This document shows positions 141-62,116 of a stretch of DNA of 64,000 bases, one piece after another. How positions within the stretch are numbered: the stretch's first letter is position 1; each line of letters starts with the position of its first letter. The DNA is taken from positions 62,001 to 126,000 of the IMG/VR virus record IMGVR_UViG_3300032240_001991; one strand, 5' to 3'. Under the pieces are notes generated by a model. It worked only from the letters and a program-made list of their open reading frames with translations, did not search any database and had not been told where the DNA came from. A program made the translations under genes and the position numbers.

Positions 141-193
141 ATGTAGCCTCTCTGTGTTGTGTTAGGACTGTCCTAACAGTTAATATATTACTA

Positions 194-412
194 TCATGCT
201 AGATCAAAGTCAACCACTAGTATCAACTCAGCTTCCCAAAGTCTAAGAGCAAAGGTGCTAGAGCCCACTCTAACGGCGAGGGGTCCGCCCCTCGCAGCGC
301 GAGCCAGTACTACCACACGCTCGCCCGCAACAAACCCCAAGTCAGCCCAACGACCACTAGGAGCAGAAGTAATTCTATAGGCACATCCCTGCACCGCTTC
401 CGCTAAGGTCAT
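194..412 (-). CDS. feoA: FeoA-like (SH3-fold) protein
   Basis: LGFVAGERVVVLARAARGGPLAVRVGSSTFALRLWEAELILV matches the FeoA pattern LG..G..V.V...A..GGP..V.V....ALR..EA..I.V. Confidence 0.7.
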   Translation of the reverse strand: MTLAEAVQGCAYRITSAPSGRWADLGFVAGERVVVLARAARGGPLAVRVGSSTFALRLWEAELILVVDFDLA

Positions 413-1572
413 GCGACTCGTAACAGTACTGTGTGCTCGTTAGTACGCGGTTTCATAGTGTGCTCCACGCCCTTGATCGCGTCAAACCACTTACGCAGTT
501 GATTCTTGCCCAGCTTCATAAACTCTGCCAGCTGAGTTTCGGGCTTACGCAGAGTCTTCTGTATGCAGCCTTTATTAGCAATGCCCACAAGACTGGTGCC
601 TTTAGCCATAATGCTCTTGTCAAATTCCCCACGATATACGCCCAGCTTGCGCCGCCGTACATCATAAACCCACACTTCTGAAGCACCCAAGACTTCTATG
701 GGCTTGATGCTGGTGATCTTGAGTTCCTTATGCTCCCCAAGATACTTGAGCTTGCGTACCAACTTAGCACGATCTACGGGTTTGGCCTTGCGTACACGAG
801 CCACTTTCTTTTCAATAGCCAAACGACCCGCACTGGCTTCACAGTCATCTAGAAACGCTATAGCAGCCTTAAGACTCTTGGCACTGACGAATCTGTAGCC
901 CTCTAAGAGCTGCTGTGTGCTGTTATCATGATCTCGGCTGGTACGAGCCTCCGCTAGTTCGCGAAGTTCCGCTGTAGACCCTGCTAGTGCTGCTGCCAGC
1001 TTCTTAAAGTGTATGGCACTAAAGCGAGCAAATCCTGTGATGTTAGCAGTCTTGCCTTCACGTACAACACCCCGTAGAATGCTGCCCACAATCTCTTCTA
1101 TTTCTATTACTGCTTGATTGACCTGCAGATCCATGCGTTCCTGCACCCCAATGCGCTCTGCAGGCTGCTGCTGTACAGCAGGAGTGTCTTCCGCTACTTC
1201 TACACGGCGTGCTGCAGACTCTGCTATACTAGACCATATGCGAGCCTGCTCAGAGTCTGTAATAGCAAAGCCTTTGACCTGCAGGCGTGCTAGATAGCTC
1301 ATGCTGGTGCTAAGATGTCGATCGCTAGCGCGTGCTAGGATCTTGAGATCTTGACCAGCAGATTCCCCACGATACAGCGTGATCCAGTCTTCAAAGAACC
1401 GTCGCGAGTCCTTGCTGTCACAGGCATAGTTATACCAGTTGAGTGCTCGTATCAAGAGCCCCATGCGTGTGGACTCTGTAACAGCAACACCTTCCCACTG
1501 AGGTTCATAGCCTCGCGTGTGTATAGTATCTGCTGATACCTTAAGATCGTAAGGTTTGAATGCTCGTGCCAT
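409..1572 (-). CDS. Conserved phage hypothetical protein (387 aa)
   Basis: Long ORF, 4-bp overlap with feoA, upstream promoter at 1636-1665; function not recognised. Confidence 0.8.
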   Translation of the reverse strand: MARAFKPYDLKVSADTIHTRGYEPQWEGVAVTESTRMGLLIRALNWYNYACDSKDSRRFFEDWITLYRGESAGQDLKILARASDRHLSTSMSYLARLQVKGFAITDSEQARIWSSIAESAARRVEVAEDTPAVQQQPAERIGVQERMDLQVNQAVIEIEEIVGSILRGVVREGKTANITGFARFSAIHFKKLAAALAGSTAELRELAEARTSRDHDNSTQQLLEGYRFVSAKSLKAAIAFLDDCEASAGRLAIEKKVARVRKAKPVDRAKLVRKLKYLGEHKELKITSIKPIEVLGASEVWVYDVRRRKLGVYRGEFDKSIMAKGTSLVGIANKGCIQKTLRKPETQLAEFMKLGKNQLRKWFDAIKGVEHTMKPRTNEHTVLLRVA

Positions 1573-1635
1573 AGTTAGTATACCTTGTTTAAAAACAGTC
1601 TAAAAAGACACCAAAAACTGTCTCTTTAGGCGGTT

Positions 1636-1665
1636 ATTTTACCACTATTTAGACCAAAAAGTCAA
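1636..1665 (-). promoter_or_regulatory. sigma70-type promoter with an overlapping TAAATA late element
   Basis: Minus strand TTGACT-18 nt-TAAAAT, with TAAATA inside the spacer. Confidence 0.55.
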
Positions 1666-1769
1666 GAAACTGAGCAAATTTTGGTAAAAAATAATTTGGT
1701 TGACAGTGGGGAAGAGAGGCATAGTTAAAATGGTGCCAACCAGTTTCCCCTCAAACCTCACCTCAAACC

Positions 1770-1952
1770 TCACCCCAAATCCGTTTTATAGCGAATGTGT
1801 ACAGCAAAGTCATAGGCTGCTTCAGGATCCAAACCTTTGGCTACAGCCCATCCCAGAGTCAAACTAAACCAATCTTGTTCGCTGTCTGGGTCAATTGCTA
1901 GTGCTCTATCGGAGCATTCGGTTTTGAACAGTTCGATCAATTGTTCGTTCAT
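1770..1952 (-). CDS. Hypothetical early protein
   Basis: ORF overlapping its upstream neighbour by 4 bp (ATGA-type coupling). Confidence 0.7.
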   Translation of the reverse strand: MNEQLIELFKTECSDRALAIDPDSEQDWFSLTLGWAVAKGLDPEAAYDFAVHIRYKTDLG

Positions 1953-2188
1953 TGGTTGCCCTCGGCCATGTCGTTAATAGCGGCCGCTGTTTGGATTCCC
2001 ATTCTGTAGCCTTCTCGAAAGGCCCGTTCTGCCACTGCTCTCACAGTGGCTCTAATGTTAATGACCAAGTCATAGCCCGGGTCGCCGGGCTCATGTGTTA
2101 GAGGATTGGCCAACTCTAACTCGTTAAGATAACTGTCAGTTAAGCCTTGGCCAACAGCCTCTAGATCATATCCAATTTTGATAGGCAT
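1949..2188 (-). CDS. Hypothetical early protein
   Basis: Directly downstream of promoter 2214-2242, with GCAAGGA RBS. Confidence 0.75.
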   Translation of the reverse strand: MPIKIGYDLEAVGQGLTDSYLNELELANPLTHEPGDPGYDLVINIRATVRAVAERAFREGYRMGIQTAAAINDMAEGNQ

Positions 2189-2213
2189 TTTCTAGTCCTT
2201 GCTGTGTCTGTGT

Positions 2214-2242
2214 ATTATAAACAGGTTTTACCGGTCTGTCAA
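2214..2242 (-). promoter_or_regulatory. Early promoter, perfect sigma70 consensus, with GGTAAAACC spacer box
   Basis: Minus strand TTGACA-gaccGGTAAAACCtgtt(17 nt)-TATAAT. Confidence 0.9.
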
Positions 2243-2245
2243 CCC

Positions 2246-2539
2246 TCAGTATGGACATCCGATCATGCCCGTGTTGTAGCGGTCCTGCATGATCTGATAG
2301 AATTCCTCAACTGCCGCTGTAGGGCTAATCTGGCGATGGCGCGGGCTGGCTAGGCGTCCTGCAGCCTTGGCGCGACCATAGGCCTTGTTGAAGTTGTCGT
2401 GGTAACTGCAACGAGCTACCGCATAATCGATACCGTCGGCCTTTTCAATAAAGGCCACAGTGGCCCCGCCACGGCTTTCAAGGCGGCCGTGAATGTCGCG
2501 CTCACGATAGTGAACATACTTGATCTTGGGCGTAGTCAT
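2246..2539 (-). CDS. Hypothetical early protein
   Basis: AAGGAG RBS and own promoter at 2577-2604. Confidence 0.75.
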   Translation of the reverse strand: MTTPKIKYVHYRERDIHGRLESRGGATVAFIEKADGIDYAVARCSYHDNFNKAYGRAKAAGRLASPRHRQISPTAAVEEFYQIMQDRYNTGMIGCPY

Positions 2540-2646
2540 TGGTCGATCTCCTTACTGTGTGTCTCTGTCTGCTGCTATTATAGCAGGTTTTACCTAACTG
2601 TCAAGAGCTAGGTAGTTTTTTTACGAGAACTACCAAACTCAAACCC

Positions 2647-3594
2647 TTACTTGGTGTTCAGGAAGGGAATCGGAGCACCTGCGTAGATATTCTGCGGCAG
2701 TTGACCGTTCCACGTCTTGGCCTTCTGCATCTCGACCTCAATGCGACGCAGTTCCAGCACATCCTTGTTCTGGGCCAGTGCAGCGTTCTGCACACGGAGT
2801 GCTTCAGCCTGGGCCTTGGCCACAGTCAAGTTAGCATAGGCCTCACCATCAGCAGTGGCCTTGGCCGCAGCAGCCTCGGCTTCTGCGATAGCGACCTTCT
2901 GCTTCTGCTCAGCCTCAACGGTCTTGAGCTTGTTCTCAGCAGCCAGGCGCAACTGCTCCTGCTCAACCTTGCTGTTGATGGCTCGCATATAACTATCCTG
3001 GAAGGCAAAGTTACGCATATCGATATTGATCACCTGGGCCCCATAGATAGCCAACTTGGCCTGCAGCGTGCTCTTAATGTCAGCAGACACCTGAGCTCGT
3101 TGTGCAATCAAGTCGGGGGCGGTATACTTGGCAGTCACAGCCTTAAACGCTTCCTGCGTGGCAGTCTGAACGTAACTGCTCAAGTCGCCATTGTGGCTGT
3201 ACTTCTCGTAGACTTCAGCAACCTTGTCAGTGGCAATGCTGTAGCGTACAGTAAGGTCAACGTGTACGGGCTGCTGATCGCTGGTGCTACCATCGGCCTT
3301 GTCAATAGAAGCAGTCTCAGCACGAATGCTGAAAATGTTCAACTTCTGCCAGGGCGGAAGGATTGCCAGGCCCTCAGCCTCAATGCCCACGATCTTACCA
3401 AACTGGGTAATGACGCCGCGGCTACCGGTGGGTACCGAAGCAAATGGGTTGGCCCATGCCAAAACCAGCACGCCAGCCACCGCTGCGGCCACATGGGTAA
3501 CGATCTTAGGTACGTTGACGTTGACGTCAGTGACTTCTTCGCCCATGCGATTGGTACGAGTGTTCTTAGTGAAATAACTGTCTGAAAATGACAT
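2647..3594 (-). CDS. SPFH/band-7/prohibitin family membrane protein
   Basis: N-terminal TM helix, VPTGSRGVITQFG, D..V..DLTVRY, coiled-coil AEAEA region, C-terminal W.G.LP. Confidence 0.9.
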   Translation of the reverse strand: MSFSDSYFTKNTRTNRMGEEVTDVNVNVPKIVTHVAAAVAGVLVLAWANPFASVPTGSRGVITQFGKIVGIEAEGLAILPPWQKLNIFSIRAETASIDKADGSTSDQQPVHVDLTVRYSIATDKVAEVYEKYSHNGDLSSYVQTATQEAFKAVTAKYTAPDLIAQRAQVSADIKSTLQAKLAIYGAQVINIDMRNFAFQDSYMRAINSKVEQEQLRLAAENKLKTVEAEQKQKVAIAEAEAAAAKATADGEAYANLTVAKAQAEALRVQNAALAQNKDVLELRRIEVEMQKAKTWNGQLPQNIYAGAPIPFLNTK

Positions 3595-3606
3595 GATATC
3601 GACCTC

Positions 3607-3852
3607 TTACTGGTAAAGTTCGTTGAAACGACGCAGGTCCACCGACAGTTTGTCAGTGGGCAAGTGCTCAGTGACTTCAAATACTTCACTGGTGCTTGCG
3701 GTAGTAATCACTGCAGGAGTGACCTGTGCAGTCTGAGTGGGCTTAGAGTGAAAGAAATAGTAACCTAGCCCAAACACAGTCATGCCTAACAGGGCAATAC
3801 CTGCTACCTTATTAAACTTCTCAAAAGAATCTTCTTTGATCGTAAACTGCAT
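3607..3852 (-). CDS. Small single-TM membrane protein
   Basis: Hydrophobic VAGIALLGMTVFGLGYYFF; GAGGAG RBS; promoter 3882-3909. Confidence 0.75.
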   Translation of the reverse strand: MQFTIKEDSFEKFNKVAGIALLGMTVFGLGYYFFHSKPTQTAQVTPAVITTASTSEVFEVTEHLPTDKLSVDLRRFNELYQ

Positions 3853-3912
3853 ATTGTCTGCTCCTCTGTCTTTGTCTGTGTAGTATAGCAGGTTTTACCA
3901 AAAAGTCAACCT

Positions 3913-4107
3913 TTAGGCCTTATCGAGTACACGAACAACGAGTTCCGTGCTCTTTACAGATTTAACCCGTTCCCATTTCTCTAGGATGTCATTTTTAGAA
4001 AAAGAACACTTCTTCTTGCGCCACTCTAGAAACTCTCGTGCCTCAATCCAGTAGACCGTTGAATCATCAACAGGGTCATACTCTTCAACCAATCGAAACT
4101 TAGCCAT
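3913..4107 (-). CDS. Hypothetical early protein
   Basis: GCAAGGAG leader; promoter 4137-4165. Confidence 0.75.
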   Translation of the reverse strand: MAKFRLVEEYDPVDDSTVYWIEAREFLEWRKKKCSFSKNDILEKWERVKSVKSTELVVRVLDKA

Positions 4108-4161
4108 TTCTCTTGCTCCTTGCTGTGTGTGCGGGTATTATACTAAGGTTTCACCAAAAAG

Positions 4162-4605
4162 TCAAGCCAATTCTTTCTTTGCCGCCCGCTTGCGAGGCAC
4201 GCCCTTCTTAGTGTAACGAACCATTCGAGCGTAACGATGCTGCCCCATCAAGATCTGGATACGACCTTCGAACCCGTCCTTAATAGGAACGTTCCCAGTT
4301 TCAATTTTGAAGTTGTTCTTGTCAAACCACTGAAGCCACTCGTAAAGTTCGGCTTCGGCTTCCTCACCGCGGCTCAATACTGCCACGCAGGGATGCTTAT
4401 GGTAGGCGTTCTCCGGACACCAAATGGCGCCATTCTTATCTGCTCGTTCGTAGTCCTCGTCGTACCATGCATAGTCTGGATAATTACCATCAACTACAAT
4501 TCCCACACAATGCCGTCCGATGCCTACTTCACCTTCAAGAGCCAGTTGACAGTTATTCTTAGCGGCCCACACTGCCATCCAGGTGATCTTCTCTTCATGC
4601 TTCAT
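4162..4605 (-). CDS. Hypothetical early protein (start refined to MKHEEK)
   Basis: AAGGAG RBS before ATG 4605; its stop TGA lies inside the next -35 element. Confidence 0.7.
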   Translation of the reverse strand: MKHEEKITWMAVWAAKNNCQLALEGEVGIGRHCVGIVVDGNYPDYAWYDEDYERADKNGAIWCPENAYHKHPCVAVLSRGEEAEAELYEWLQWFDKNNFKIETGNVPIKDGFEGRIQILMGQHRYARMVRYTKKGVPRKRAAKKELA

Positions 4606-4663
4606 TTTTCGCTCCTTTACACACTTGGGTTTTTCACACCAAGGGTGACGACTGTGAATATCG

Positions 4664-4867
4664 TTATTTCCCATGGGCTAATGACTCTTGAATTTCATTA
4701 ACCCAGCAACTGATGTCGCTGCTGCCGATCTCTTCAAAATCGTAGAGATAAGCGGCCTTTTCGTCGATAGCGTCTAAAAGACGACTGCCATACTCAACTA
4801 GGAGATCTATATGCTGGGTGCGTATACGATAGATGATGCAATCTTTAACTGCTTGACTGCTGCTCAC
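4664..4867 (-). CDS. Hypothetical early protein
   Basis: GCAAGGAG leader; promoter 4897-4926. Confidence 0.7.
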   Translation of the reverse strand: MSSSQAVKDCIIYRIRTQHIDLLVEYGSRLLDAIDEKAAYLYDFEEIGSSDISCWVNEIQESLAHGK

Positions 4868-4922
4868 GGTCTACTCCTTGCTGTGTGTATGAGGCTATTA
4901 TACTATGGTTTTACCAGTACTG

Positions 4923-5513
4923 TCAACCACTATGAGTCTTGAGAACGTCAATCAGGCTCTTGCTTAGGTCCCAGTGGCCCTTCAAAACCGCTTCGCAGGC
5001 CAGCTGGGAGATTCGATCCAGGAATTCCGTTTCTGAGGTGTGCTCTTGCACCAGCACACCCAGTCCCTTGAGTCGAGCCACCAGCTCAGGGTACCCCTCA
5101 GGGTGTTTGACGTAGCAGCCTTGCACATCGTCGTAGGCACGAGGGTCCACCGGCAACTGCTGTGGGCCCTGACGCTCGCTCACCTCTTTGGCTTCACGGA
5201 GACCCAGGTTGGCCAGCTCTCGCAGGGCCTTGATTCCGCTGACCTTGCGATTGCCCCATTCGGTGGGCATGGTTACAGTCACTTTGCTAGGTATCATAAC
5301 AAATCCTTTCTGAGGGAGGCTTCTGCTCAAATTAATGGGCTGCTTCAGAGCGTTACGAGCAATGTCCCGTGCAGCAACCACATCCGCGCGGGCCCACTCG
5401 TTGATGTCCTCGGCATAGTAGATCTTGCGTTCAATCTCAGACAGACTGGTCCGCAGTCGCTGGATTTCGGCTTGCAACAGGTCTTGATCGCTCACGTCTA
5501 CTCCTGTAAACAA
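4923..5513 (-). CDS. Protein with a ribosomal L7/L12 C-terminal-domain-like motif (alternative start at 5297)
   Basis: KVSGIKALRELANLGLREAKEVSE resembles the bL12 CTD KI.VIK.VR..TGLGLKEAK..VE; second RBS GAAAGGA before ATG 5297. Confidence 0.6.
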   Translation of the reverse strand: MFTGVDVSDQDLLQAEIQRLRTSLSEIERKIYYAEDINEWARADVVAARDIARNALKQPINLSRSLPQKGFVMIPSKVTVTMPTEWGNRKVSGIKALRELANLGLREAKEVSERQGPQQLPVDPRAYDDVQGCYVKHPEGYPELVARLKGLGVLVQEHTSETEFLDRISQLACEAVLKGHWDLSKSLIDVLKTHSG

Positions 5514-5543
5514 TAGCCCAGGGTCACATAACCCTGGCGCTCT

Positions 5544-5726
5544 TTATTGTTCGTGTACTATAGCAGGTTTTACCACAGGCGTCAACTGATTTTTTGCCTT
5601 AGGGCCCTTGTACCCCGTGCCCTTCTGATAGATCAACCACACATGGTCAGAGCAGTAACTGCGGTTCTGATAGCCGGGGCGGCCACACTTGGCCTGCCCC
5701 TCATCACGCCATTCACACTTGGGCAC
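5544..5726 (-). CDS. Small Cys/His-containing hypothetical protein
   Basis: C-x10-C-x9-C-x2-H pattern; follows the ATPase gene directly. Confidence 0.6.
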   Translation of the reverse strand: MPKCEWRDEGQAKCGRPGYQNRSYCSDHVWLIYQKGTGYKGPKAKNQLTPVVKPAIVHEQ

Positions 5727-5727
5727 G

Positions 5728-6591
5728 TTACACCCCCTTCTTCATGCAGGTCGTCTTAGCCATACCCTTCCACGCAGCAGGGAAGCTCTTCTTGAGGTCT
5801 GCAATCTTGAGCACCATACGCAGGCTGAGCTCGCGCAGTTGAGTAGAGTTAGTAGCGATGTAATCCAAAATCTCTGCCTTCTCTGCTTCTTCAAACTCGT
5901 ATTTCTGCAACATCCCATCGCCTACAATCTGACGAATACGCAGGAGTTTTTCTCGGTCCGTATCCATCTGCAGGTCAATGTAGTGGCAGCGACTTTCAAG
6001 TGCCATCAAGTGACTACGCAGTTTCTTAGAACGTACATACTCAAATTTGATGTTGGTGATAAAGATCGCAGCACCACAGAACTCAAAGCGGTCTGGAATG
6101 CCTTCGCTACGCAAGAGTCGGCTGTCCAAGTTCCAGCTGATGTAGCGGCGCTCAGAACTGTCTAGCGCACCCTTAAGGATATTGAGGCTCAACTGGTCCA
6201 TGAGCACATCGTCGCAGTCGTCAAAGACCACTACGTTACCCTTATCAGCGAACCCAAACAGTTTAGCATAGAGACCCAGAGCACTCATAGCACCCTTGAC
6301 AATCTCATACTTAGGCTTACGCTGAGCCAAGGTATTGAACAGGTCGTCCTTCTGCAGAACAGCCTCAACACCAAAACTCTTGCCTACGCCGGGCGGCCCG
6401 CTGACAATCATAGCCCGCACATCCCCATGCTTGACAGCACGGGTCATGTCATCTAGAATCTGGAAACGAGAACGCAGGCGCTCAAGAATCTCATCGTCAG
6501 TTTCGGCCTGCACCTCTTGTGCGCGGCGTGCGATTGCTTCTTGGTCAAAGTCAATTACATTCTCAATCTTGGTAGTAGCGGTTCGAGCCAT
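5728..6591 (-). CDS. AAA+ family P-loop ATPase
   Basis: Walker A GPPGVGKS, Walker B VVVFDDCD, arginine-finger region ALESRC. Confidence 0.9.
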   Translation of the reverse strand: MARTATTKIENVIDFDQEAIARRAQEVQAETDDEILERLRSRFQILDDMTRAVKHGDVRAMIVSGPPGVGKSFGVEAVLQKDDLFNTLAQRKPKYEIVKGAMSALGLYAKLFGFADKGNVVVFDDCDDVLMDQLSLNILKGALDSSERRYISWNLDSRLLRSEGIPDRFEFCGAAIFITNIKFEYVRSKKLRSHLMALESRCHYIDLQMDTDREKLLRIRQIVGDGMLQKYEFEEAEKAEILDYIATNSTQLRELSLRMVLKIADLKKSFPAAWKGMAKTTCMKKGV

Positions 6592-6644
6592 TAGGTCACC
6601 TCTGTATATTTAAGACTGTATTATACTGAATTTTTGGTAAAAAG

Positions 6645-7004
6645 TCAATCCATGCGTGAGCCAACACTGGCATCAAGCCCCTGGCTTTTCAGTACCTTAG
6701 CGAACGCATCAGCATAGGCTTCTTTGAGCTCCATGCTCTGATTGCCCTCGTGAACCCAGTATTGCAGCCCCGGCTGGCTGTAACTCTTTTGGAATCCCTG
6801 CTCAGTCAAGCGGCGTCCTACCCGGCTGTTGCTACGGACCCCACGGATATTGACCCAAGCAAACCCACAAGGGCCTCCGGGTACCGTCCACCGATGCTGG
6901 CCGTCAGTGACCACCATGGGTTGAGGATTAGCAGCCTGAAGAGCAGCCATGCCCTGACGGTGCGCTTCTGCAAGAACTTCGTCGATATTCTGTTCAGTTA
7001 CCAT
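6645..7004 (-). CDS. Conserved phage hypothetical protein (start refined to MVTEQ)
   Basis: GCAAGGAG RBS before ATG 7004; promoter 7033-7061. Confidence 0.75.
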   Translation of the reverse strand: MVTEQNIDEVLAEAHRQGMAALQAANPQPMVVTDGQHRWTVPGGPCGFAWVNIRGVRSNSRVGRRLTEQGFQKSYSQPGLQYWVHEGNQSMELKEAYADAFAKVLKSQGLDASVGSRMD

Positions 7005-7047
7005 GTATATGCTCCTTGCTGTCAGTGTGCGTATACTAGCACAGGTT

Positions 7048-7359
7048 TTACCAGCCGTCAACCGGTCGCAGTCCGCTGATTACTCCTGCTTGGCTTAGTG
7101 TATCTTTTACACGGTTAAGGGCAGAACCACTATGGCCCCCAACGTGCCAGGCATAGAGACCCTTGGGAGTTTCGTCTTCCTTCCAATCGTAGATAGTGGC
7201 CACAGTACCATCTGCATACCGTAGTACCCACCCTACCGTAATCTTGTCCCCGCCCATAACATCCGGAGGACCAAATATCGCTACCAGTTGATCATAGGTA
7301 GCAGTAACGTATCCCACAAGGCTAGTGCCGGTGCCTTCGGCGTCTTTAGTAAACTTCAT
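7048..7359 (-). CDS. Conserved phage hypothetical protein
   Basis: GCAAGGAG RBS; promoter 7386-7414; ATIYDWK...W.VGG motif. Confidence 0.75.
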   Translation of the reverse strand: MKFTKDAEGTGTSLVGYVTATYDQLVAIFGPPDVMGGDKITVGWVLRYADGTVATIYDWKEDETPKGLYAWHVGGHSGSALNRVKDTLSQAGVISGLRPVDGW

Positions 7360-7410
7360 CTGGATCTCCTTGCTAGTGTTCGCGTACTATAGCACAGGTT
7401 TTACCAAAAG

Positions 7411-7623
7411 TCAAACTTCGTTGGCGTCTACATCCAGTTCTGTTTCGTCTTGGACATAGTCATAGGCCGAGGTCAATTCTTGATCAAAATCCCATTCACT
7501 TGTTTCTGCACAGTAGTGAATGATGTCTGCGATAAGATCTGCCGGACGAGTATAATTCTCGTTATTAAGGAACATCTGGGCCACTCGACCCACTGCCTGC
7601 TGGCGAAAAGTAAGATAGGTCAT
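7411..7623 (-). CDS. Hypothetical early protein
   Basis: GAGGAG RBS; acidic C-terminus. Confidence 0.7.
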   Translation of the reverse strand: MTYLTFRQQAVGRVAQMFLNNENYTRPADLIADIIHYCAETSEWDFDQELTSAYDYVQDETELDVDANEV

Positions 7624-7647
7624 TATCGCTCCTCAAGTCAAACGTAG

Positions 7648-7672
7648 GGGGGTGCAGTTGCCTACACCCCCC
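7648..7672 (-). terminator. GC-rich stem-loop, probable terminator
   Basis: GGGGGTG-cagttgccta-CACCCCC immediately after the stop at 7679. Confidence 0.5.
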
Positions 7673-7678
7673 AGTGGA

Positions 7679-7882
7679 TTAGCCCACCAGCGCGTTGTTA
7701 CGCACGGTGTTGCTAACGCGGCCGTACAGCCCATCGGCCGCCTTCTCCGAGATCTCCTTGCGGAGACCGCCCGACGCCGTTCCGTTGCCGCTCAACATAC
7801 GCGCCACAGCACGGATGCTGCGGAACTTGTAGGTCAGGCCCGAGTTCGGAAAGGTCACATCGATCGTTACATTGCGCTTCAT
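7679..7882 (-). CDS. Small basic hypothetical protein
   Basis: AAGGAGAG RBS; promoter 7926-7954. Confidence 0.7.
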   Translation of the reverse strand: MKRNVTIDVTFPNSGLTYKFRSIRAVARMLSGNGTASGGLRKEISEKAADGLYGRVSNTVRNNALVG

Positions 7883-7969
7883 TTCAACTCTCCTTAAGTT
7901 ACTAGCACCTTGCTAGTATGTCGTTACTATAACACCGTCTAATGACTGTGTCAACCTTTTTTTACCAAA

Positions 7970-8614
7970 TCAGTGAGCGTAGTAGCCCACGTTCTCAACA
8001 CTCTCATCCCAACAGGCACGGCACGAGCCGCACTCATTGTCCTGGAAACGGCTTGGGCAATCATACCCATGCGCTTCGCTGTTCTTGTGCACGGTGCTGG
8101 TGTGCGTCCACCCCTTGGGCGGCTCAGCATCAATCATCTGTGCACTCATACGAATTACAAGGTTCTTAGGCCGAGTATACTGCCTTAGGAACTCTCGCAC
8201 AATACCAAACTCACGGGTAGGCAACCAATGGTCGATCCAGGGCGTCAATTCAGCCACGCGAGCAATCATCATAAGATGCTTCACGCTCTGCAGGTCCCCA
8301 CTGTCGTGCCAGCGAAAGTATTCTTCATTCTGCATCAATTTGACCATTGCACTGACCCACGAGTCCTCTGTAAGAGTGTCGTGTAGGGCTTCTACGAGCG
8401 TCGTGTAGCGGCGATCGTGAGCGGCCACTGTGCTCTTCCAAGTGTAAGCACCTTTGAGTGCGTAGCACTTAAAGCAGACGCTGCCCTCAACCAATCGTAG
8501 TTTGCTGCCAGTATGACATTTCTTAGCACTGAAGCCAAAACTCTTGCCTGGCATCTTAGAAGGCTCACTCAATCCTCCTACGAACTCTCCTGCTGCTGCC
8601 TTGGTCTTGAACAT
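7970..8614 (-). CDS. Gp88-like protein (Cys-rich)
   Basis: C..GSKL....SVC..CYA, FRWHDSGD, WLPTRE, C-terminal C.SC.ACW; typical of the mycobacteriophage gp88 family. Confidence 0.75.
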   Translation of the reverse strand: MFKTKAAAGEFVGGLSEPSKMPGKSFGFSAKKCHTGSKLRLVEGSVCFKCYALKGAYTWKSTVAAHDRRYTTLVEALHDTLTEDSWVSAMVKLMQNEEYFRWHDSGDLQSVKHLMMIARVAELTPWIDHWLPTREFGIVREFLRQYTRPKNLVIRMSAQMIDAEPPKGWTHTSTVHKNSEAHGYDCPSRFQDNECGSCRACWDESVENVGYYAH

Positions 8615-8671
8615 TTCTGCTCCTTGCTAGTGTTCGTGTACTATAACACAGGTTTTACCAAAGGTCAACCA

Positions 8672-8857
8672 CTAACTATTCCAAGGAACGGTTCTCACGG
8701 TAACGCCGTCCCTGTCTGTTTCATAGAGGCCGGCTTCGTGTATGATGTATTGATCTTGAAAATGATCAAACTCTAGATCTGCACGATCCTTGGCCTCCTC
8801 TTCGGTACAGTCCGGAAGATCTACTTCTACTTGGATACGCATCATGTACTTAGGCAT
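8672..8857 (-). CDS. Hypothetical early protein
   Basis: Small acidic ORF in the early cassette. Confidence 0.6.
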   Translation of the reverse strand: MPKYMMRIQVEVDLPDCTEEEAKDRADLEFDHFQDQYIIHEAGLYETDRDGVTVRTVPWNS

Positions 8858-8941
8858 TAGAACCCCTCAGGAAGATAGCCCGTAAGCCGCTCTATCGCTT
8901 CAACTAACGAAAACCCCATCTCTTTACGCATATTATTCTCC

Positions 8942-9295
8942 TTAATCAGAACTGTCAACATCGTTGATCTGACCGCAATGAACACACTCATAGCGATTGT
9001 AGCAACGTCCAAGATTCATCGTCCGCACCCACTCATGCCCAGAGCACTTCGCAGCAATGGCCTCAGTCACATAGCCATGTCCGTAGCAGTGACTACACGC
9101 ACAGGTGAAGTGTCTGTAGCGATGCCGATTCTCTGGAGTGTCAGGTCTACCGTGTAGACTGTAGGAGTTGAGACTGAGATTCCAACCACCATACCCACGA
9201 CACTTTGGGCACTCTACGATGTAATCATACAGAGGTTCCTTGCGCGAGAAGTCCACGAAGGCATCTGGATGATCTGGCGTAAGAAAGTCTGACAT
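8942..9295 (-). CDS. Zn-finger protein with DnaJ-type CxxCxGxG repeats
   Basis: CPKCRGYGG and CSHCYGHG plus CVHCG; GCAAGGAG RBS; promoter 9325-9352. Confidence 0.75.
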   Translation of the reverse strand: MSDFLTPDHPDAFVDFSRKEPLYDYIVECPKCRGYGGWNLSLNSYSLHGRPDTPENRHRYRHFTCACSHCYGHGYVTEAIAAKCSGHEWVRTMNLGRCYNRYECVHCGQINDVDSSD

Positions 9296-9348
9296 ATGTT
9301 ACTCCTTGCTCTAACTATGCGACTATTATAGCAGGTTTTACCAAAAAG

Positions 9349-9972
9349 TCAACCTTCGTATTCACCTTCTGGATCAATCCCATGTTTATTGAGATCGATC
9401 TCTAAATTCTCTTCATCATCCCCGTCCTCATCTTCATACTCTGCCTGCTCGCGTTCGTACTCTTCAATCTGCTCGGAGATACAGAAACGTTCGTCCAGTT
9501 CAGTAATCTGTTCACGGACCTGGTCAGCAGTCCATCCGCTATAGTCTACGGAATTATCTCCTTCACTGTTAGTAAAGGTTCCTGCAAATTGCATACCTTG
9601 TTCATGATAGTAGGCTTCAACTTCAAAGCCCTGCTTTACCATATACTCAAAGAAAGCAATAGGTGGCCCCCATGCACTGTCAAAGAAGAGTTCGATGAGA
9701 TCAACTTCTTCATTGATGATGCGGGCGTCAACATCCCACTTGATTCCCCAGTTCTTGCATTGCCAACTATACCAGTCTGGAGCACCGTACTTCTCAATGA
9801 ACTCAGTGGCTCGCTGCCCTTCCCATTCGGGCGAACAATATTCATGCAACTCTGCAGGGCAAGGCAAGAACTCGTTGAATAATCGGTCGGCCTTGACGCC
9901 AGTCTTGACTCGCAAGATCATAGCCGGGTCCTTGTGGGTAAAGGTCACGTGATTCGCGCACCAATTTGGCAT
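9349..9972 (-). CDS. DUF1281/YubB-like ferredoxin-fold protein
   Basis: MPNWCAN, DWYSWQCKNWGIKWD, FDSAWGPP, YYHEQG motifs. Confidence 0.85.
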   Translation of the reverse strand: MPNWCANHVTFTHKDPAMILRVKTGVKADRLFNEFLPCPAELHEYCSPEWEGQRATEFIEKYGAPDWYSWQCKNWGIKWDVDARIINEEVDLIELFFDSAWGPPIAFFEYMVKQGFEVEAYYHEQGMQFAGTFTNSEGDNSVDYSGWTADQVREQITELDERFCISEQIEEYEREQAEYEDEDGDDEENLEIDLNKHGIDPEGEYEG

Positions 9973-10025
9973 TTAAAATTCCTCTTGTTAGTGTCTGTGT
10001 ACTATAGCAGAGGTTTTACCAATTG

Positions 10026-10211
10026 TCAACCTCTCATTAGGTCAAAGATGCTTCGTTGTAGATCTGCCAGTTCATCATGCGGAACATAAAAGTCTGTTCT
10101 AGGATCCCAGTACTCGCCCTCTTTGGGATCATAGTACAAGACCCTGCCGTTGGGATACTGGAAGGGGCCTTCCAACCCCTTCCTGGGCCCATAGTCTTTA
10201 GAGAGGGCCAT
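10026..10211 (-). CDS. Conserved phage hypothetical protein (start refined to MALSK)
   Basis: GLEGPF.YPNGRVLYYDPKEGEYWDP.TD motif. Confidence 0.7.
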   Translation of the reverse strand: MALSKDYGPRKGLEGPFQYPNGRVLYYDPKEGEYWDPRTDFYVPHDELADLQRSIFDLMRG

Positions 10212-10362
10212 TGACGCGCCGGTCAAGTGCGGCACCCCAACCAGCAAAGGCTACCACCCATGCAATAGAAGCACTAGAGTCACCCAAATACCAGTTGATA
10301 AGAAAAAGAATCAGCGTTGATGCCACTAGGCCAAATTCAAGAAAAGTAAGATACCGTTTCAT
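10198..10362 (-). CDS. 54-aa two-TM membrane protein (not in the ORF track)
   Basis: Manual translation MKRYLTFLEFGLVASTLILFLINWYLGDSSASIAWVVAFAGWGAALDRRVNGPL; AAGGAG RBS. Confidence 0.6.
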   Translation of the reverse strand: MKRYLTFLEFGLVASTLILFLINWYLGDSSASIAWVVAFAGWGAALDRRVNGPL

Positions 10363-10448
10363 AAGAACTCCTTAAGAATGGCAGTTTTTTCTGTAGTGCT
10401 GCCAACTGCGGTCTATACTTATATAGCGCCTGTCCTCGCGCTTCCGGA

Positions 10449-10781
10449 TTAGGCTGCGTCGCGCAGGCGATAAATCACGCCCGTCGCAGTCTCCACAATG
10501 TCAACATCGCTGTTGGCAGCGTACCAGTCAAAGTTACGGACCTTGGTGCTGTCACGCTCCCAGTCGGTAGGACCTTCAACCTTGACCGCAAGCCACTTCT
10601 TGCGGATGTTGAAGAACACGCGACGTCCTGGGTAGACTTCGCGAACACGTTCAGCAAAGTGTTCACCGCCCTTGATGTAAGAGTCGGGCCAAAGCCGGCG
10701 GTTCTCGCGGCTCTTGTTGACGGCGTCCACGTAGGCGCCCACGCGATCAGATGCAAACCAGTTTTCAGTACGCTTGAACAT
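10449..10781 (-). CDS. Hypothetical early protein
   Basis: AAGGAG RBS; promoter 10821-10849. Confidence 0.75.
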   Translation of the reverse strand: MFKRTENWFASDRVGAYVDAVNKSRENRRLWPDSYIKGGEHFAERVREVYPGRRVFFNIRKKWLAVKVEGPTDWERDSTKVRNFDWYAANSDVDIVETATGVIYRLRDAA

Positions 10782-10857
10782 TTTTCGCTCCTTTTGCTAG
10801 CACCTTGCTAGCGTGCCAATACTATAACAAAGGTTTTACCAACTGTCAACCATTAAA

Positions 10858-11190
10858 AAAATGCATTCTCCCTGCTGGCGGTATTTTCCATTCACCACAA
10901 ACAATTATGTGGTATCCGCTGCCCAACACAGGGAGACTGTCGTGCTGCTAACGCCCGTTTGGTTTGACGGCAGTATTGCTACTGGAGACCATTGACCACT
11001 CACCTTGCGGTGGATAGGCTGTTCTCAAACCACCCGTAGATGTCACTCTACTTCTATCGTGCGGGTCACACTAGCCGCTAACTAGGCGGCGTGTTCAGTA
11101 AAGATTGGTTGGAAAGATTCGTCAAAATCTATCTTCGCCAGTTGACGCTGACCGCCCAAACCTGGGCGCCAATCTTAAATCGTTTAACTT
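10858..11190 (-). ncRNA. Candidate large structured ncRNA A (about 330 nt), family not recognised
   Basis: No ORF of 60 aa or more in 10782-11234; own promoter 11197-11225; at least eight helices including two GCAA tetraloop hairpins; ends in a U-tract. Confidence 0.65.
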
Positions 11191-11234
11191 GGGTCTAGCA
11201 TAACAATTTTACCAAACCCTGTCAACCAAATTGT

Positions 11235-11480
11235 TTACTCTTCTACCGCAATGACAGAATCCTTGCGGAAACTGCGCCATCCGGCCTTTTCCACATCCCA
11301 AACGCTGACCACATCGGGATTAGGAACTCGAGCCTGCCCCGTGCCAGTGCTGGGCGGCAAACGGCTTTCCTGCAGAGTGCAACGAAGATTCCGTACTGTG
11401 CCATCGCTCTTAGTAAAGCGAACAGTACGCTCACCCAAACGTAGGTCATTCAGCAACTGATCAAAATTGATCTTAGTCAT
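11235..11480 (-). CDS. DUF2693/WYL_2-like SH3 beta-barrel protein
   Basis: V.FTKSDGTVRNLRCTL...VWDVEKAGWRSFR motif; AAGGAG RBS; promoter 11505-11533. Confidence 0.75.
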   Translation of the reverse strand: MTKINFDQLLNDLRLGERTVRFTKSDGTVRNLRCTLQESRLPPSTGTGQARVPNPDVVSVWDVEKAGWRSFRKDSVIAVEE

Positions 11481-11539
11481 ATAGATACTCCTTATTGAGC
11501 CGCCACTATAGCATCAAGAGGGCCTGCTGTCAATTTCTT

Positions 11540-11875
11540 CTTAATTGGGAGTGGGGGTGGACCCCATGTGGTTCCTGAGCAGGTGTCTGTTGACGCGCCC
11601 AGACAAGATTCTGCTCATATATAAGAGTGTGGAGCCGCTGGCTATGGGTGTACCGCGGCTCCCTCCACGACTTTCTGGGATCGAAATCCGCCCTAGACCT
11701 CTGATGTGGGTAGTCGTCTCAGCATTATCGCACCCGGTACACAAGATCTTCCTAATCTTCCGCCGGACTGTTATCCAGCCCGCAACTATGTTGACCAGTT
11801 AGGTCCGGACCTACCCTAGCGATTATCAGCATCCTAGGTCAGCTTTGGACTTCACTTTCTGCTTGGAGTTTTAAC
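11540..11875 (-). ncRNA. Candidate large structured ncRNA B (about 335 nt), family not recognised
   Basis: Starts just after TAAATA (11881-11886); nine or more helices, a UUCG loop, a 7-8 bp pseudoknot; only RBS-less shadow ORFs overlap it. Confidence 0.6.
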
Positions 11876-11892
11876 AAAAGTATTTAACCAGT

Positions 11893-11976
11893 TGGTGCGA
11901 GTGGAGGGATTCGAACCCTCAAGCCGTTGGGCGGCAGATTTTAAGTCTGCTGTGTATACCGTTCCACCACACTCGC
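11893..11976 (-). tRNA. trnL: tRNA-Leu(UAA)
   Basis: GCGAGTG acceptor, anticodon arm GCAGA-CTTAAAA-TCTGC, long variable arm, GGTTCGAATCC T-arm, encoded CCA. Confidence 0.97.
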
Positions 11977-12012
11977 ATATCATACAGTAATTATATATTC
12001 TAAATCTAAATA

Positions 12013-12142
12013 GTCCTAGCCTCGGTTTACTATTCTCTTGCTACCTGATGCAGATGCTTACAGCATCATTTACTAGTATCACAGGCTACCCGCTTCGAAC
12101 AAGGTTAGGTTTGTACTCAACCCGACGAGCCGAGGCTAGGAC
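12013..12142 (-). ncRNA. Candidate 130-nt RNA with 13-bp paired ends inside the tRNA operon
   Basis: GTCCTAGCCTCGG (12013-12025) is the exact reverse complement of CCGAGGCTAGGAC (12130-12142); internal GATGCT-tac-AGCATC hairpin. Confidence 0.6.
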
Positions 12143-12147
12143 ATAAT

Positions 12148-12223
12148 TGGTGGGCCCTCAGGGATTCGAACCCTGAACCAAAGGATTATGAGTCCTCTGC
12201 TCTAACCGTTGAGCTAAAGGCCC
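12148..12223 (-). tRNA. trnI: tRNA with CAU anticodon, probably tRNA-Ile2 (lysidine type) rather than Met
   Basis: 76 nt, GGGCCTT/GAGGCCC-like acceptor ending GGGCCCACCA, anticodon arm GAGGA-CTCATAA-TCCTT, encoded CCA; lacks the initiator GGG/CCC anticodon stem and 1:72 mismatch. Confidence 0.9.
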
Positions 12224-12243
12224 GTGTATATTATTACAGCGGG

Positions 12244-12251
12244 GTATTTAT
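12244..12251 (-). promoter_or_regulatory. T4-type late promoter TATAAATA driving the tRNA/ncRNA cluster
   Basis: Exact TATAAATA on the minus strand about 20 nt upstream of the tRNA(CAU) 5' end. Confidence 0.7.
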
Positions 12252-12253
12252 AA

Positions 12254-12394
12254 TTAACACTCCGTAAGATAGTGATATTCACGCCCTGGAAATTGTGCTT
12301 CGATTAGCCTCTTAGCATCCCAATAGTCTCGAGCCTGCAGCTCATAATCAACTGATCTTCCGTCTATCATCAGTGTACAACGATACCTACGCAT
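12254..12394 (-). CDS. 46-aa hypothetical protein (not in the ORF track)
   Basis: MRRYRCTLMIDGRSVDYELQARDYWDAKRLIEAQFPGREYHYLTEC; promoter TTGACA-17-TATACT at 12426-12454; GAGAG RBS. Confidence 0.65.
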   Translation of the reverse strand: MRRYRCTLMIDGRSVDYELQARDYWDAKRLIEAQFPGREYHYLTEC

Positions 12395-12485
12395 ATATGT
12401 ACTCTCTATCTGTTAGTGTCTGCATAGTATAGGGTCAGATCAGTAAGTTGTCAACAGTGGCCTAAATATATACAGCGGGGTATTA

Positions 12486-13202
12486 CTAGGTACGCCCTGC
12501 CCTTACTACATCTATAAAGAAGTTACCCTGTTTAATTTTATATCCGTTAGATATGATTTGATAGGCTAGTAGTGTCTCTGAGTGCGGAGTTAGTCCTTTC
12601 GATATAAATTCGTTAAAATGATTAACAGAGTCAGTGTACAGTCGCATACCGTTTGAAGATGATACAGCAAAGGATGAGTTGATTTGATAACCGTTATGAC
12701 CATGACCTATGTTGCTATCAGTAACTATAGTGTTAGGGTCACGAGATATAACATCATTAACTTCTCTAAGATCTAAAGGTGTGCCTTTTACTCCCGCATC
12801 AGGACGAGCTCTGATCACAAGGTCGTACTCACCGTGAGTTTTTTCATACTCTTGTCTAAGTAAATCAGATTGGTGTAGACTGGTATAATGCATCCAAAGT
12901 CTAAAGTCAGTAACAGATCGGTTATGCGGACTGATGTGAGGGAAGTTTTCCATATCATCAAGTTTGAGTACTACCAGTCTATGTCCTGCTGGTAACCCTT
13001 TTTCTATTTTGGATAAGGTACTTTGGTAGTCTAAGGTATCACTCCATTCGGGTAACATTAGAGAAGTATCACCGTCAACAATATTGTTTCTCCATAGATA
13101 AACGAACCAATCTATTTGATCAGCGCCAACGATGTTTTTACAAAAGAAATCAAACTCTCTGCAGAATCTGGGTTGACCTGCAATAATTCCTGCAACTTTC
13201 AT
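12486..13202 (-). CDS. Putative glycosyltransferase-related protein
   Basis: N-terminal AGIIAGQPR and YDLVIRARPD motifs, as seen in phage and giant-virus glyco-gene families; TAAATA upstream. Confidence 0.5.
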   Translation of the reverse strand: MKVAGIIAGQPRFCREFDFFCKNIVGADQIDWFVYLWRNNIVDGDTSLMLPEWSDTLDYQSTLSKIEKGLPAGHRLVVLKLDDMENFPHISPHNRSVTDFRLWMHYTSLHQSDLLRQEYEKTHGEYDLVIRARPDAGVKGTPLDLREVNDVISRDPNTIVTDSNIGHGHNGYQINSSFAVSSSNGMRLYTDSVNHFNEFISKGLTPHSETLLAYQIISNGYKIKQGNFFIDVVRAGRT

Positions 13203-27282: not shown

Positions 27283-27311
27283 TTGACATTACTGGTAAAA
27301 TCTCTTATACT
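27283..27311 (+). promoter_or_regulatory. Early promoter with GGTAAAA box upstream of the DNA ligase gene
   Basis: TTGACA-ttactGGTAAAAtctct(17)-TATACT. Confidence 0.85.
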
Positions 27312-59234: not shown

Positions 59235-59263
59235 TTGACAACATTCCTAAATTGTTGTATAGT
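59235..59263 (+). promoter_or_regulatory. sigma70 promoter of tmRNA
   Basis: TTGACA-17 nt-TATAGT. Confidence 0.8.
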
Positions 59264-62088: not shown

Positions 62089-62116
62089 TTGCATCTTTTG
62101 GTAAAACCTGTATAAT
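62089..62116 (+). promoter_or_regulatory. Early promoter with GGTAAAACC box (TAAATA late element follows)
   Basis: TTGCAT-cttttGGTAAAACCtg-TATAAT; TAAATA at about 62128. Confidence 0.75.

What the first reader, a model, noticed from the sequence alone, without database searches (positions are those of the whole stretch)
2214..11225. Conserved GGTAAAACC box inside the spacer of about 15 sigma70 promoters
Seen: 13 early promoters carry GGT(A/G)AAA(CC) at a nearly fixed position in the -35/-10 spacer (2214, 2577, 3882, 4137, 4897, 5557, 7033, 7386, 8640, 9325, 10001, 10821, 11197). So do the distant ligase (27283) and 62089 promoters. The 6620 promoter has the box inverted. Isolated copies lie upstream of late promoters (about 29710 and 38051). 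Known: sigma70 spacers are normally sequence-tolerant, and T4 MotA boxes and the PeSL cassettes of T4-type phages are precedents for extra conserved promoter elements. Inference: this is an operator for a phage repressor or activator that shuts off or switches early transcription, and the repeats may also promote cassette shuffling by recombination.
Basis: partly seen in the sequence, partly recalled or inferred. Interest (0 to 1): 0.65.

Follow-up and report, generated by a model that had tools for sequence, protein, structure and literature searches.

The report
Operator-like box inside phage early promoters
A 9-base near-palindrome (GGTAAAACC) sits in the middle of a gene-specific subset of host-type early promoters in an uncultured T4-like giant phage and many of its relatives; it behaves like a selected protein-binding site that resembles operators of bacterial FadR/PdhR-type metabolite-sensing repressors, but no binding protein has been identified.

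Summary
All 12 exact copies of GGTAAAACC in the 326,658-bp genome lie in the spacer of TTGAC-N16-18-TAnnnT promoters. The window holds all 12, against 0.49 expected by chance. Eleven drive minus-strand early genes at window 2214-10849. Three variant boxes lie at 4155, 11213 and 27294.

The box is not a by-product of recent duplication:
- Its flanks are variable.
- Its register shifts by 1-3 nt while the total spacer length is kept.
- In 80 related IMG/VR loci it is the most enriched spacer word: 99 forward, 16 inverted.
- It is nearly all-or-none, always GGT-N3-ACC with an A/T centre.

Its distribution is gene-specific. The conserved ATPase and a second gene family never carry it (0/55). Between this phage and relative G005, box status is conserved in 8 of 8 orthologous promoters, although the proteins are only 35-72% identical and gene order is shuffled.

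The promoter-UTR-SD cassettes are PeSL-like, as in T4-type phages, but the box hairpin is too weak to terminate transcription.

The box matches the FadR-subfamily GntR operator core (TKGT-N3-ACMA; the PdhR box GGTnnnACC). Neither this phage nor four near-complete relatives encode a GntR protein, so a host regulator is a leading candidate. This is unproven.

The "isolated" copies and the "inverted" copy at 6620 are only partial matches at chance level.

The parts
2214..2242 (-). Early promoter TTGACA-17-TATAAT with exact box at 2224-2232; drives the 79-aa ORF 1949-2188
2577..2604 (-). Early promoter (16-nt spacer, TGn extended -10) with exact box at 2586-2594; drives the 97-aa ORF 2246-2539. 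The ortholog in G005 also has the box, with different flanks
3882..3909 (-). Early promoter with exact box at 3891-3899; drives the 81-aa ORF 3607-3852 and the SPFH/Band-7 gene 2647-3594
4137..4165 (-). Early promoter with variant box GGTGAAACC at 4147-4155; drives the 64-aa ORF 3913-4107
4897..4926 (-). Early promoter (18-nt spacer) with exact box at 4907-4915, here TGGTAAAACCA
5557..5585 (-). Early promoter with exact box at 5566-5574; drives the 190-aa ORF. The G005 ortholog has an 8-of-9 box
7033..7061 (-). Early promoter with exact box at 7044-7052; drives the 119-aa ORF ending at 6645. In relatives this orthologous promoter has the box forward at other offsets, inverted, or absent
7386..7414 (-). 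Early promoter with exact box at 7397-7405; drives the 103-aa ORF 7048-7359
8640..8668 (-). Early promoter with exact box at 8651-8659; drives the GP88-family 214-aa ORF 7970-8614. The G005 ortholog keeps the box with the register shifted by 1 nt
9325..9352 (-). Early promoter with exact box at 9334-9342; drives the 117-aa ORF 8942-9295. Nearly identical to the G005 promoter
10001..10029 (-). Early promoter with exact box at 10012-10020; drives the 207-aa ORF 9349-9972
10821..10849 (-). Early promoter with exact box at 10832-10840; drives the 110-aa ORF 10449-10781
11197..11225 (-). Promoter with degenerate box GGTAAAATT at 11205-11213; followed by about 340 nt without an ORF (10850-11190)
27283..27311 (+). 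Promoter of the ATP-dependent DNA ligase gene (27343-28644) with variant box GGTAAAATC at 27294-27302
62089..62116 (+). Promoter (weak -35 TTGCAT) with exact box at 62100-62108, preceded by a terminator-like hairpin plus T-run
6620..6648 (-). Box-less promoter of the conserved AAA ATPase gene (5728-6591). Its homologs never carry the box (0 of 82)
7926..7954 (-). Box-less promoter of the 67-aa ORF 7679-7882 (weak NUMOD-like lead). Also box-less in G005
11505..11533 (-). Box-less promoter of the WYL_2 (Sm-like SH3) 81-aa ORF 11235-11480

Best explanation
The box (T)GGT-AAA-ACC is a selected cis-regulatory site, in effect an operator. It lies at about -25 to -17, in the centre of the spacer of a gene-specific subset of strong sigma70-type early promoters. 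These promoters belong to repeated promoter-5'UTR-Shine-Dalgarno cassettes of the PeSL type in a T4-like jumbo phage clade.

Shown:
- It is statistically real.
- It is conserved independently of its flanks and of its exact register.
- It occurs in both orientations.
- It is nearly all-or-none.
- It marks the same genes in a diverged relative.

Inferred:
- A dyad-symmetric (dimeric) DNA-binding protein recognises the GGT/ACC arms. The A/T centre coincides with a general A/T-rich mid-spacer preference of these promoters.
- A protein bound there would occlude RNA polymerase, so one class of early genes could be repressed or gated while box-less early genes, such as the ATPase, stay unregulated.
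- The sequence fits the FadR-subfamily GntR operator (TKGT-N3-ACMA; PdhR core GGTnnnACC). The phages encode no GntR protein, so the leading candidate binder is a host metabolite-sensing regulator. A phage protein of unrecognised fold is about equally possible.
For: - Enrichment: 12 exact 9-mers against 0.49 expected, and all genome copies lie in promoter spacers.
- Own-phage logo: the box scores 1.8 bits per position and the flanks 0-0.9 bits.
- Clade set chosen without regard to the box (80 loci, 1.18 Mb): GGTAAAACC is the top spacer word, with 99 forward and 16 inverted copies among 948 gene-strand promoters. 92% of forward copies lie in spacers.
- GGT-N3-ACC occurs in spacers only with centre AAA, TTT, TTA or TAA, and at no other spacing. 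One-mismatch variants are rare: 17 against 115.
- Gene specificity: the ATPase family has 0/27 and a second family 0/28 in box-positive loci, where 25.5% of promoters have the box. Their spacers differ widely in sequence, so the absence is not simple inheritance.
- Own phage against G005: 4 of 4 box-to-box (one is 8 of 9) and 4 of 4 no-box-to-no-box, at 35-72% protein identity, with flanks and register changed.
- The pattern occurs 7-16 times in four near-complete relatives, and the reversed-pattern control gives 0.
- Operator resemblance: PdhR core GGTnnnACC, with E. coli sites GGTaaaACC (PMC7660256). FadR-subfamily consensus TKGT/ACMA with a 3-nt gap (PMC4494728). The exact 9-mer occurs in predicted FadR and PdhR sites.
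- No GntR domain in the phage or in four near-complete box-positive relatives.
Against: - No binding protein is identified and no expression data exist.
- The host is unknown. The only hint is a beta-proteobacterial-type permuted tmRNA.
- Only one arm has the full TGGT. The other is usually ACCT rather than ACCA.
- Orientation is biased 99:16, and inverted copies sit closer to the -10. A purely symmetric reader does not predict this.
- The centre is never G/C, unlike E. coli PdhR sites.
- Within G005 the whole -35-to-box stretch is homogenised (TTGACCTTTTGGTAAAACC), so copy-and-paste among cassettes also operates.
- Across larger distances the box turns over in orthologous promoters.
- Other lineages carry other repeated spacer words, such as GGGTCTTTG, so the box is not required for promoter function.
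Confidence: 0.5

Rival explanations
1. One reading: the box is the operator of a phage-encoded repressor or activator that shuts off or switches a class of early promoters during infection.
For: The evidence for selection is the same as for the best explanation. Different phage lineages carry different repeated spacer words: GGGTCTTTG in L188/L189 and TTTGGATAGGGTG in L123. That is what co-evolving phage regulators would produce. Multi-box loci in IMG/VR all belong to this phage clade. A 67-aa early ORF (7679-7882) gives a weak NUMOD-like DNA-binding lead.
Against: No GntR, HTH_3, RHH, MarR, MotA, AsiA or sigma region 2 domain was found in the 326-kb record. Gene families enriched in box-positive loci have no homolog in this phage. 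On the ATPase tree the box is patchy, needing at least 8 changes, and this phage's nearest neighbours lack it. The promoters already have consensus -35 and -10 elements, so an activator is unnecessary.
Confidence: 0.25
2. The box is an RNA-polymerase-intrinsic spacer element: a shape or flexibility module around a mid-spacer A-tract that tunes promoter strength, with no separate binding protein.
For: Box-less promoters of the clade are also A/T-rich at -22 to -18 and carry TG at -15/-14. The A-tract of the box sits exactly there. Orientation is biased 99:16. The box stays central in the spacer, at offsets of 3-6 nt.
Against: Register relative to both hexamers varies, and inverted copies occur at other positions. 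The GGT/ACC arms are palindromic. Consensus promoters without the box are abundant and drive the most conserved genes. Whole lineages do without it.
Confidence: 0.13
3. The box has no function of its own. It is a passenger of promoter cassettes that spread by duplication, gene conversion and PeSL-type recombination, or it is kept only as recombination homology.
For: Cassettes are repeated and partly homogenised within genomes: G005 has 10 copies of TTGACCTTTTGGTAAAACC, and the 9352 promoter is identical between the two phages. Gene order is shuffled, with block ends at the -35. PeSLs are known to mediate such shuffling (PMC2839356).
Against: In this phage the 3-6 nt on either side of the box are nearly random while the 9 contiguous bases are invariant. 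The same 9-mer, and not lineage-specific variants, is kept across relatives whose ATPase is 65-77% identical. Box status is gene-specific. The 5'UTR motif CTAGCAAGG is shared by box and box-less promoters, so the cassettes are mosaics.
Confidence: 0.1
4. The box is the stem-loop of a PeSL: an RNA or DNA hairpin acting as attenuator or terminator for read-through from the upstream gene.
For: [quoted passage not shown] Many relatives have GGG...CCC palindromic spacers: 15-21% of spacers fold at -3 kcal/mol or lower, against 4-6% of shuffles.
Against: GGU-AAA-ACC folds at only -0.8 kcal/mol, and the flanks do not extend the stem (T at -1 and T at +1). Terminator-like sites in 1-13000 are at chance, 9 against 10.2.
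Confidence: 0.02

Closest known systems
PeSLs (promoter-early stem-loops) of T4-type phages (Arbiol et al. 2010, PMC2839356; Comeau et al. 2014, PMC4122927)
   Same: Both occur in T4-like phages (this one has a Gp23-type capsid). [quoted passage not shown] Cassette-bounded gene shuffling is seen between relatives.
   Different: The extra element here is an invariant 9-bp word with a negligible hairpin (-0.8 kcal/mol) and no terminator signature. It is not a polyG/polyC stem-loop. It marks only a gene-specific subset of promoters and is conserved as sequence across diverged lineages.
Operators of FadR-subfamily GntR regulators (PdhR box AATTGGTnnnACCAATT with core GGTnnnACC; FadR, LldR, GlcC)
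   Same: TGGT / ACC arms separated by exactly 3 nt, an A/T-rich palindrome, and occurrence in both orientations. The exact GGTAAAACC is found in bound or predicted PdhR and FadR sites. A position overlapping the core promoter is typical of repressors.
   Different: Only about 10 bp are conserved. The second arm is mostly ACCT, not ACCA. The centre is restricted to A/T. The sites lie in a phage genome that encodes no GntR protein. Binding is untested.
Dispersed phage operators: P1 C1 operators, mycobacteriophage L5 stoperators, phiC31 conserved inverted repeats (from my own knowledge, not checked here)
   Same: One short sequence is repeated at many promoters or intergenic sites across a phage genome and read by a single regulator.
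   Different: Those belong to temperate phages with a known phage-encoded repressor. Here the phage is T4-like, presumably lytic, and no repressor gene is identified.
T4 MotA boxes at middle promoters (PMC2988021)
   Same: An extra conserved promoter word in a T4-type phage that defines a promoter class.
   Different: The MotA box replaces the -35 at about -30 and needs AsiA and MotA. Here the -35 is consensus, the box is centred at about -21, and no MotA or AsiA homolog is present.

Membership tests
PeSL-type mobile promoter cassette | Strong sigma70-like early promoter repeated in front of many small, mostly ORFan genes of a T4-type phage, ending in SD plus start codon | tested here: met
   31 promoter-like sites in 1-13000 against 13.5 expected, nearly all on the gene strand. 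A conserved UTR/SD (AGCAAGGAG) follows. The phage has a Gp23 capsid.
PeSL-type mobile promoter cassette | A stable stem-loop within or next to the promoter that acts as terminator or attenuator | tested here: not met
   Own box spacers fold at -0.8 to -2.9 kcal/mol. Terminator-like sites are at chance. Some relatives do have GGG...CCC spacers.
PeSL-type mobile promoter cassette | Gene shuffling between relatives with junctions in the cassettes | tested here: met
   Gene order differs between the own phage and G005. Homology blocks end at own 2605, 8668 and 9354, which are the -35 hexamers.
FadR-subfamily GntR operator | Conserved TKGT / ACMA arms | tested here: inconclusive
   The left arm TGGT is met (T at -1 scores 1.4 bits clade-wide). 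The right arm is ACC followed mostly by T, and by A only in some copies, such as own 4907-4915.
FadR-subfamily GntR operator | 3-nt distance between GT and AC; A/T-rich palindrome | tested here: met
   In 948 spacers GGT..ACC occurs only with N3 (119 cases; 0-1 at N0-N5 otherwise). The centre is AAA, TTT, TTA or TAA.
FadR-subfamily GntR operator | Bound by a GntR-family winged-helix dimer, usually released by a small-molecule effector | not testable with these tools
   No GntR domain in the phage or in four near-complete relatives. The host is unknown.
T4 MotA-dependent middle promoter | MotA box centred at -30 replacing the -35; MotA and AsiA encoded | tested here: not met
   The -35 TTGACA is intact and the box lies at about -25 to -17. 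No MotCF or AsiA domain was found.

The most novel reading that the evidence does not exclude
A large clade of uncultured T4-like jumbo phages has wired a defined subset of its early promoters to a host FadR/PdhR-type metabolite-sensing repressor. The start of infection would then be gated by the host's carbon or energy state. Alternatively, the many replicated boxes would titrate the host regulator and derepress host central metabolism. Other lineages would have swapped in other operator words for other hosts or regulators.
Probability: 0.15. Interest if true: 0.8.

Novelty: new variant of a known kind. Interest (0 to 1): 0.6.

Why it matters
Early promoters of lytic phages are usually viewed as constitutive, maximally strong host-type promoters whose spacers are free to vary. 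Here a short palindromic word inside the spacer divides early genes into two classes. The division is kept across diverged relatives while the genes are shuffled. That is a regulon signature in the first minutes of infection of a phage group with at least 595 matching contigs in IMG/VR.

If it is a phage protein, it is an unrecognised early regulator.

Either way the box gives a concrete, mutable handle (GGT/ACC arms) for experiments. It also gives a marker for promoter classes in metagenomic phage genomes, and it extends the PeSL cassette-shuffling model well beyond the coliphages and vibriophages where it was described.

Tried and rejected
- Close relatives in GenBank phages: none. There was only a 65-nt chance-like hit and distant RNR hits.
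- Terminator or hairpin reading of the box: rejected on energy and on the terminator scan.
- MotA/AsiA-type middle-promoter reading: rejected on anatomy and on the absence of the genes.
- Sigma54 (-24/-12) and LexA (CTGT-N8-ACAG) readings: checked by eye only. The spacing does not fit, or only a few copies come close.
- Phage-encoded regulator hunt:
  - Pfam and PHROGs on 20 island ORFs gave no DNA-binding family.
  - Six-frame searches for GntR, HTH_3, RHH_1, MarR and Sigma70_r2 were negative or sub-threshold.
  - Co-occurrence of gene families with box-positive loci gave only families confounded by phylogeny and absent from this phage.
  - The Atlas gave only a weak NUMOD-like lead for one 67-aa ORF.
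- Host identification: mis-binned MAG hits point to Planktophila, Ignavibacteria and Legionellales and are uninformative. 'relatives' is not available for virus records.
- Expression evidence: no RNA runs hold this DNA.
- Unrelated phages sharing the box: none. All multi-box IMG/VR loci share proteins with this clade, and the single hits elsewhere fit chance.
- Literature: no paper describes this box in phage promoters.
- The careful tree did not finish, so the quick tree was used.

Full report
**Context.** The window is bases 62,001-126,000 of a single 326,658-bp IMG/VR virus record.
- The phage is T4-like. It has a Gp23-type major capsid protein at 262 bits.
- It encodes tRNAs and a permuted tmRNA of the beta-proteobacterial type.
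- It has no close relative among deposited phages.
- The genome is about 37% G+C, but a roughly 24-kb island (genome 50-74 kb, which includes window 1-12,000) is 48-50% G+C.
- All genes of the island are on the minus strand. They are small and mostly without known families. The exceptions are an SPFH/Band-7 protein, an AAA ATPase, a GP88-family protein and a WYL_2 protein.

**Check of the observation.**
- Eleven sites have the exact 9-mer. One has GGTGAAACC (4155) and one has GGTAAAATT (11213).
- The promoter at 62089 has the exact box. The ligase promoter at 27283 has GGTAAAATC.
- The window holds 12 exact copies against 0.49 +/- 0.73 in shuffles.
- The whole genome holds only these 12, all in sigma70-type spacers.
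- The position is not fixed. The box moves by up to 3 nt relative to either hexamer while the spacer stays 16-18 nt.
- The 'inverted' copy at 6620 and the 'isolated' copies at 29710 and 38051 are 7-mer matches at chance level.
- The island also has good sigma70-type promoters without the box: 6648 (ATPase), 7954, 11533, 12454, 1665, and several upstream of the window.

**Is it only recent duplication?** No. In the own phage the nine box positions carry 1.8 bits each, the maximum after small-sample correction. The 3-6 nt on either side carry 0-0.9 bits. The leader motif CTAGCAAGG is shared by box and box-less promoters, so the cassettes are mosaics.

**Relatives.** The ATPase (5728-6591) has at least 595 homologous contigs in IMG/VR at about 70-77% identity. 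Several of these contigs are 320-355 kb. In the 80 best loci (1.18 Mb), chosen without regard to the box:
- There are 948 promoter-like sites on the gene strand and 118 on the other strand.
- GGTAAAACC is the most enriched spacer word: 99 spacers forward and 16 inverted as GGTTTTACC.
- 92% of all forward copies on the gene strand lie in spacers.
- GGT..ACC occurs in spacers only with a 3-nt centre, and that centre is AAA, TTT, TTA or TAA.
- One-mismatch variants are rare, 17 against 115.
- The clade-wide logo of 85 distinct sites shows only a T before the box as an extra conserved position.
- Multi-box loci found by a pattern scan all belong to this clade.
- Four near-complete relatives carry 7-16 box promoters. 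The reversed-pattern control gives 0.

**Gene specificity.** In 30 box-positive loci, 25.5% of promoters carry the box.
- The ATPase family (0/27) and a second conserved family (0/28) never do, although their spacers differ widely among phages.
- Another family's orthologous promoter carries the box forward at several offsets, inverted, or not at all.
- On the ATPase tree the box is patchy, needing at least 8 changes, and this phage's nearest neighbours lack it. That tree is the quick one; the careful search did not finish.

**Comparison with G005.** The most useful comparator is G005 (328 kb), with 15 box promoters at 64-80 kb on the minus strand.
- Orthologous proteins are 35-72% identical.
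- Box status is conserved in 8 of 8 orthologous promoter pairs: four box-to-box (one is 8 of 9) and four no-box-to-no-box.
- Flanks and register differ in the box pairs.
- Gene order is shuffled, and homology blocks end at the -35 hexamer (own 2605, 8668, 9354).
- Within G005 the stretch TTGACCTTTTGGTAAAACC is homogenised. Copy-and-paste among cassettes therefore also occurs.

**What it is.** The cassettes match the published PeSLs of T4-type phages. [quoted passage not shown] The defining stem-loop or terminator is not met here.
- The box folds at -0.8 kcal/mol and its flanks do not extend the stem.
- Terminator-like sites are at chance.
- Some relatives do have GGG...CCC spacers.

**Why an operator.** The anatomy points to a sequence-specific, dyad-symmetric protein site.
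- The arms GGT/ACC are palindromic.
- The gap is fixed at 3 nt.
- Both orientations occur.
- Conservation is nearly all-or-none.

Box-less promoters of the clade are also A/T-rich at -22 to -18 and have TG at -15/-14. The A/T centre of the box may therefore serve the promoter, and the arms the binder. The word equals the core of FadR-subfamily GntR operators.
- The PdhR box is AATTGGTnnnACCAATT with an essential 9-bp core GGTnnnACC. E. coli sites at grcA, fliA, fadI and wzc read GGTaaaACC (PMC7660256).
- The subfamily consensus is TKGT/ACMA with a 3-nt gap (PMC4494728).
- The exact 9-mer appears in predicted FadR and PdhR sites.
- Neither this phage nor four near-complete relatives encode a GntR domain.
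- No HTH_3, RHH, MarR, MotA, AsiA or sigma region 2 domain was found.

A host regulator is therefore a leading candidate. A phage protein of unrecognised fold is not excluded; a 67-aa early ORF gives a weak NUMOD-like lead. A protein bound at -25 to -17 would occlude RNA polymerase. With consensus hexamers already present, repression or gating is more likely than activation. This last step is inference from general knowledge of promoter-overlapping operators.

**Cautions.**
- Orientation is biased 99:16, and inverted copies sit nearer the -10.
- The second arm is mostly ACCT.
- The box turns over in orthologous promoters at larger distances.
- Other lineages use other spacer words.
- There are no RNA data, and the host is unknown.

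**Probabilities.** Within the 0.5, the host regulator is only the leading candidate; the full host-metabolic-gating scenario is put at 0.15 (novel case). The remainder goes to an RNA-polymerase-intrinsic spacer module, a functionless passenger of cassette spread, and, least likely, a hairpin attenuator.

**Novelty.** PeSL-like cassettes are known. An invariant operator-like word inside the spacer that defines a conserved subset of early promoters across a large uncultured jumbo-phage clade was not found in the literature searched. I rate it a new variant of a known kind.

Noticed in passing
window 1-12000 (genome 50,000-74,000): The early-gene island is 48-50% G+C in a genome of about 37% G+C. 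Box-rich loci of relatives are also 45-49% G+C, while other relatives' early regions range from 34 to 55%. The cause is unknown; it could be different origin, exchange among phages, or expression constraints.
   Followed up: partly
window 10850-11190, minus strand: About 340 nt without an ORF, downstream of the degenerate-box promoter at 11225. It is 84% identical to G005 75409-75638. There is no Rfam match even at E<=1, and the fold z-score is -1.8. It is a possible phage non-coding RNA.
   Followed up: partly
window 59234-59615 (+): A phage-encoded permuted (two-piece) tmRNA matching the beta-proteobacterial model, with tag peptide ANDDVYAMELAA. tRNA-Leu and tRNA-Met lie at 11893-12223, at the island edge. 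This is the only host hint.
   Followed up: no
L188/L189, L123, L124, L142, L168 (relatives): Other lineages have their own repeated spacer words or palindromes in the same promoter frame. Examples are TTGACA-GGGTCTTTG (17 of 35 promoters in L188), TTTGGATAGGGTG, GGGTTATTG, and GCGGGC...GCCCGC hairpins. Their leaders are also genome-specific.
   Followed up: partly
clade-wide, 558 box-less promoters: The spacers have a general profile: G-rich at -29 to -27, A/T-rich at -22 to -18, and T-15 G-14 (extended -10) in about 55%.
   Followed up: yes
own window vs G005 (L206, L207): Early gene order is shuffled between two phages of about 327 kb. Modules consist of a promoter plus a gene, and homology ends at the -35 hexamer (own 2605, 8668, 9354). 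One promoter plus the gene's 5' end is nearly identical between them (9250-9410), which suggests recent exchange.
   Followed up: yes
genome 139223, 208005, 252122 (+) and window 6648 (-): Four promoters begin TTGACT-TTT(T)ACC, which is a half-box directly after the -35. Three of them lie in the AT-rich part of the genome outside the window.
   Followed up: no
window 9907-9971: A 65-nt stretch inside ORF 9349-9972 is 85% identical to a tRNA-Leu region of the crAss-like phage Phass-1. ARAGORN finds no tRNA here. Probably chance.
   Followed up: no
whole record G000: CheckV completeness is given as 36% for this 326.7-kb record. Relatives of the same size and layout are rated 92-100%. The estimate for this record is probably too low.
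   Followed up: no
window 18430-20391 (-) and 16789-18426 (-): A 653-aa protein with collagen triple-helix repeats lies next to a Laminin_G_3/glycine-rich protein. These are probably fibre proteins.
   Followed up: no
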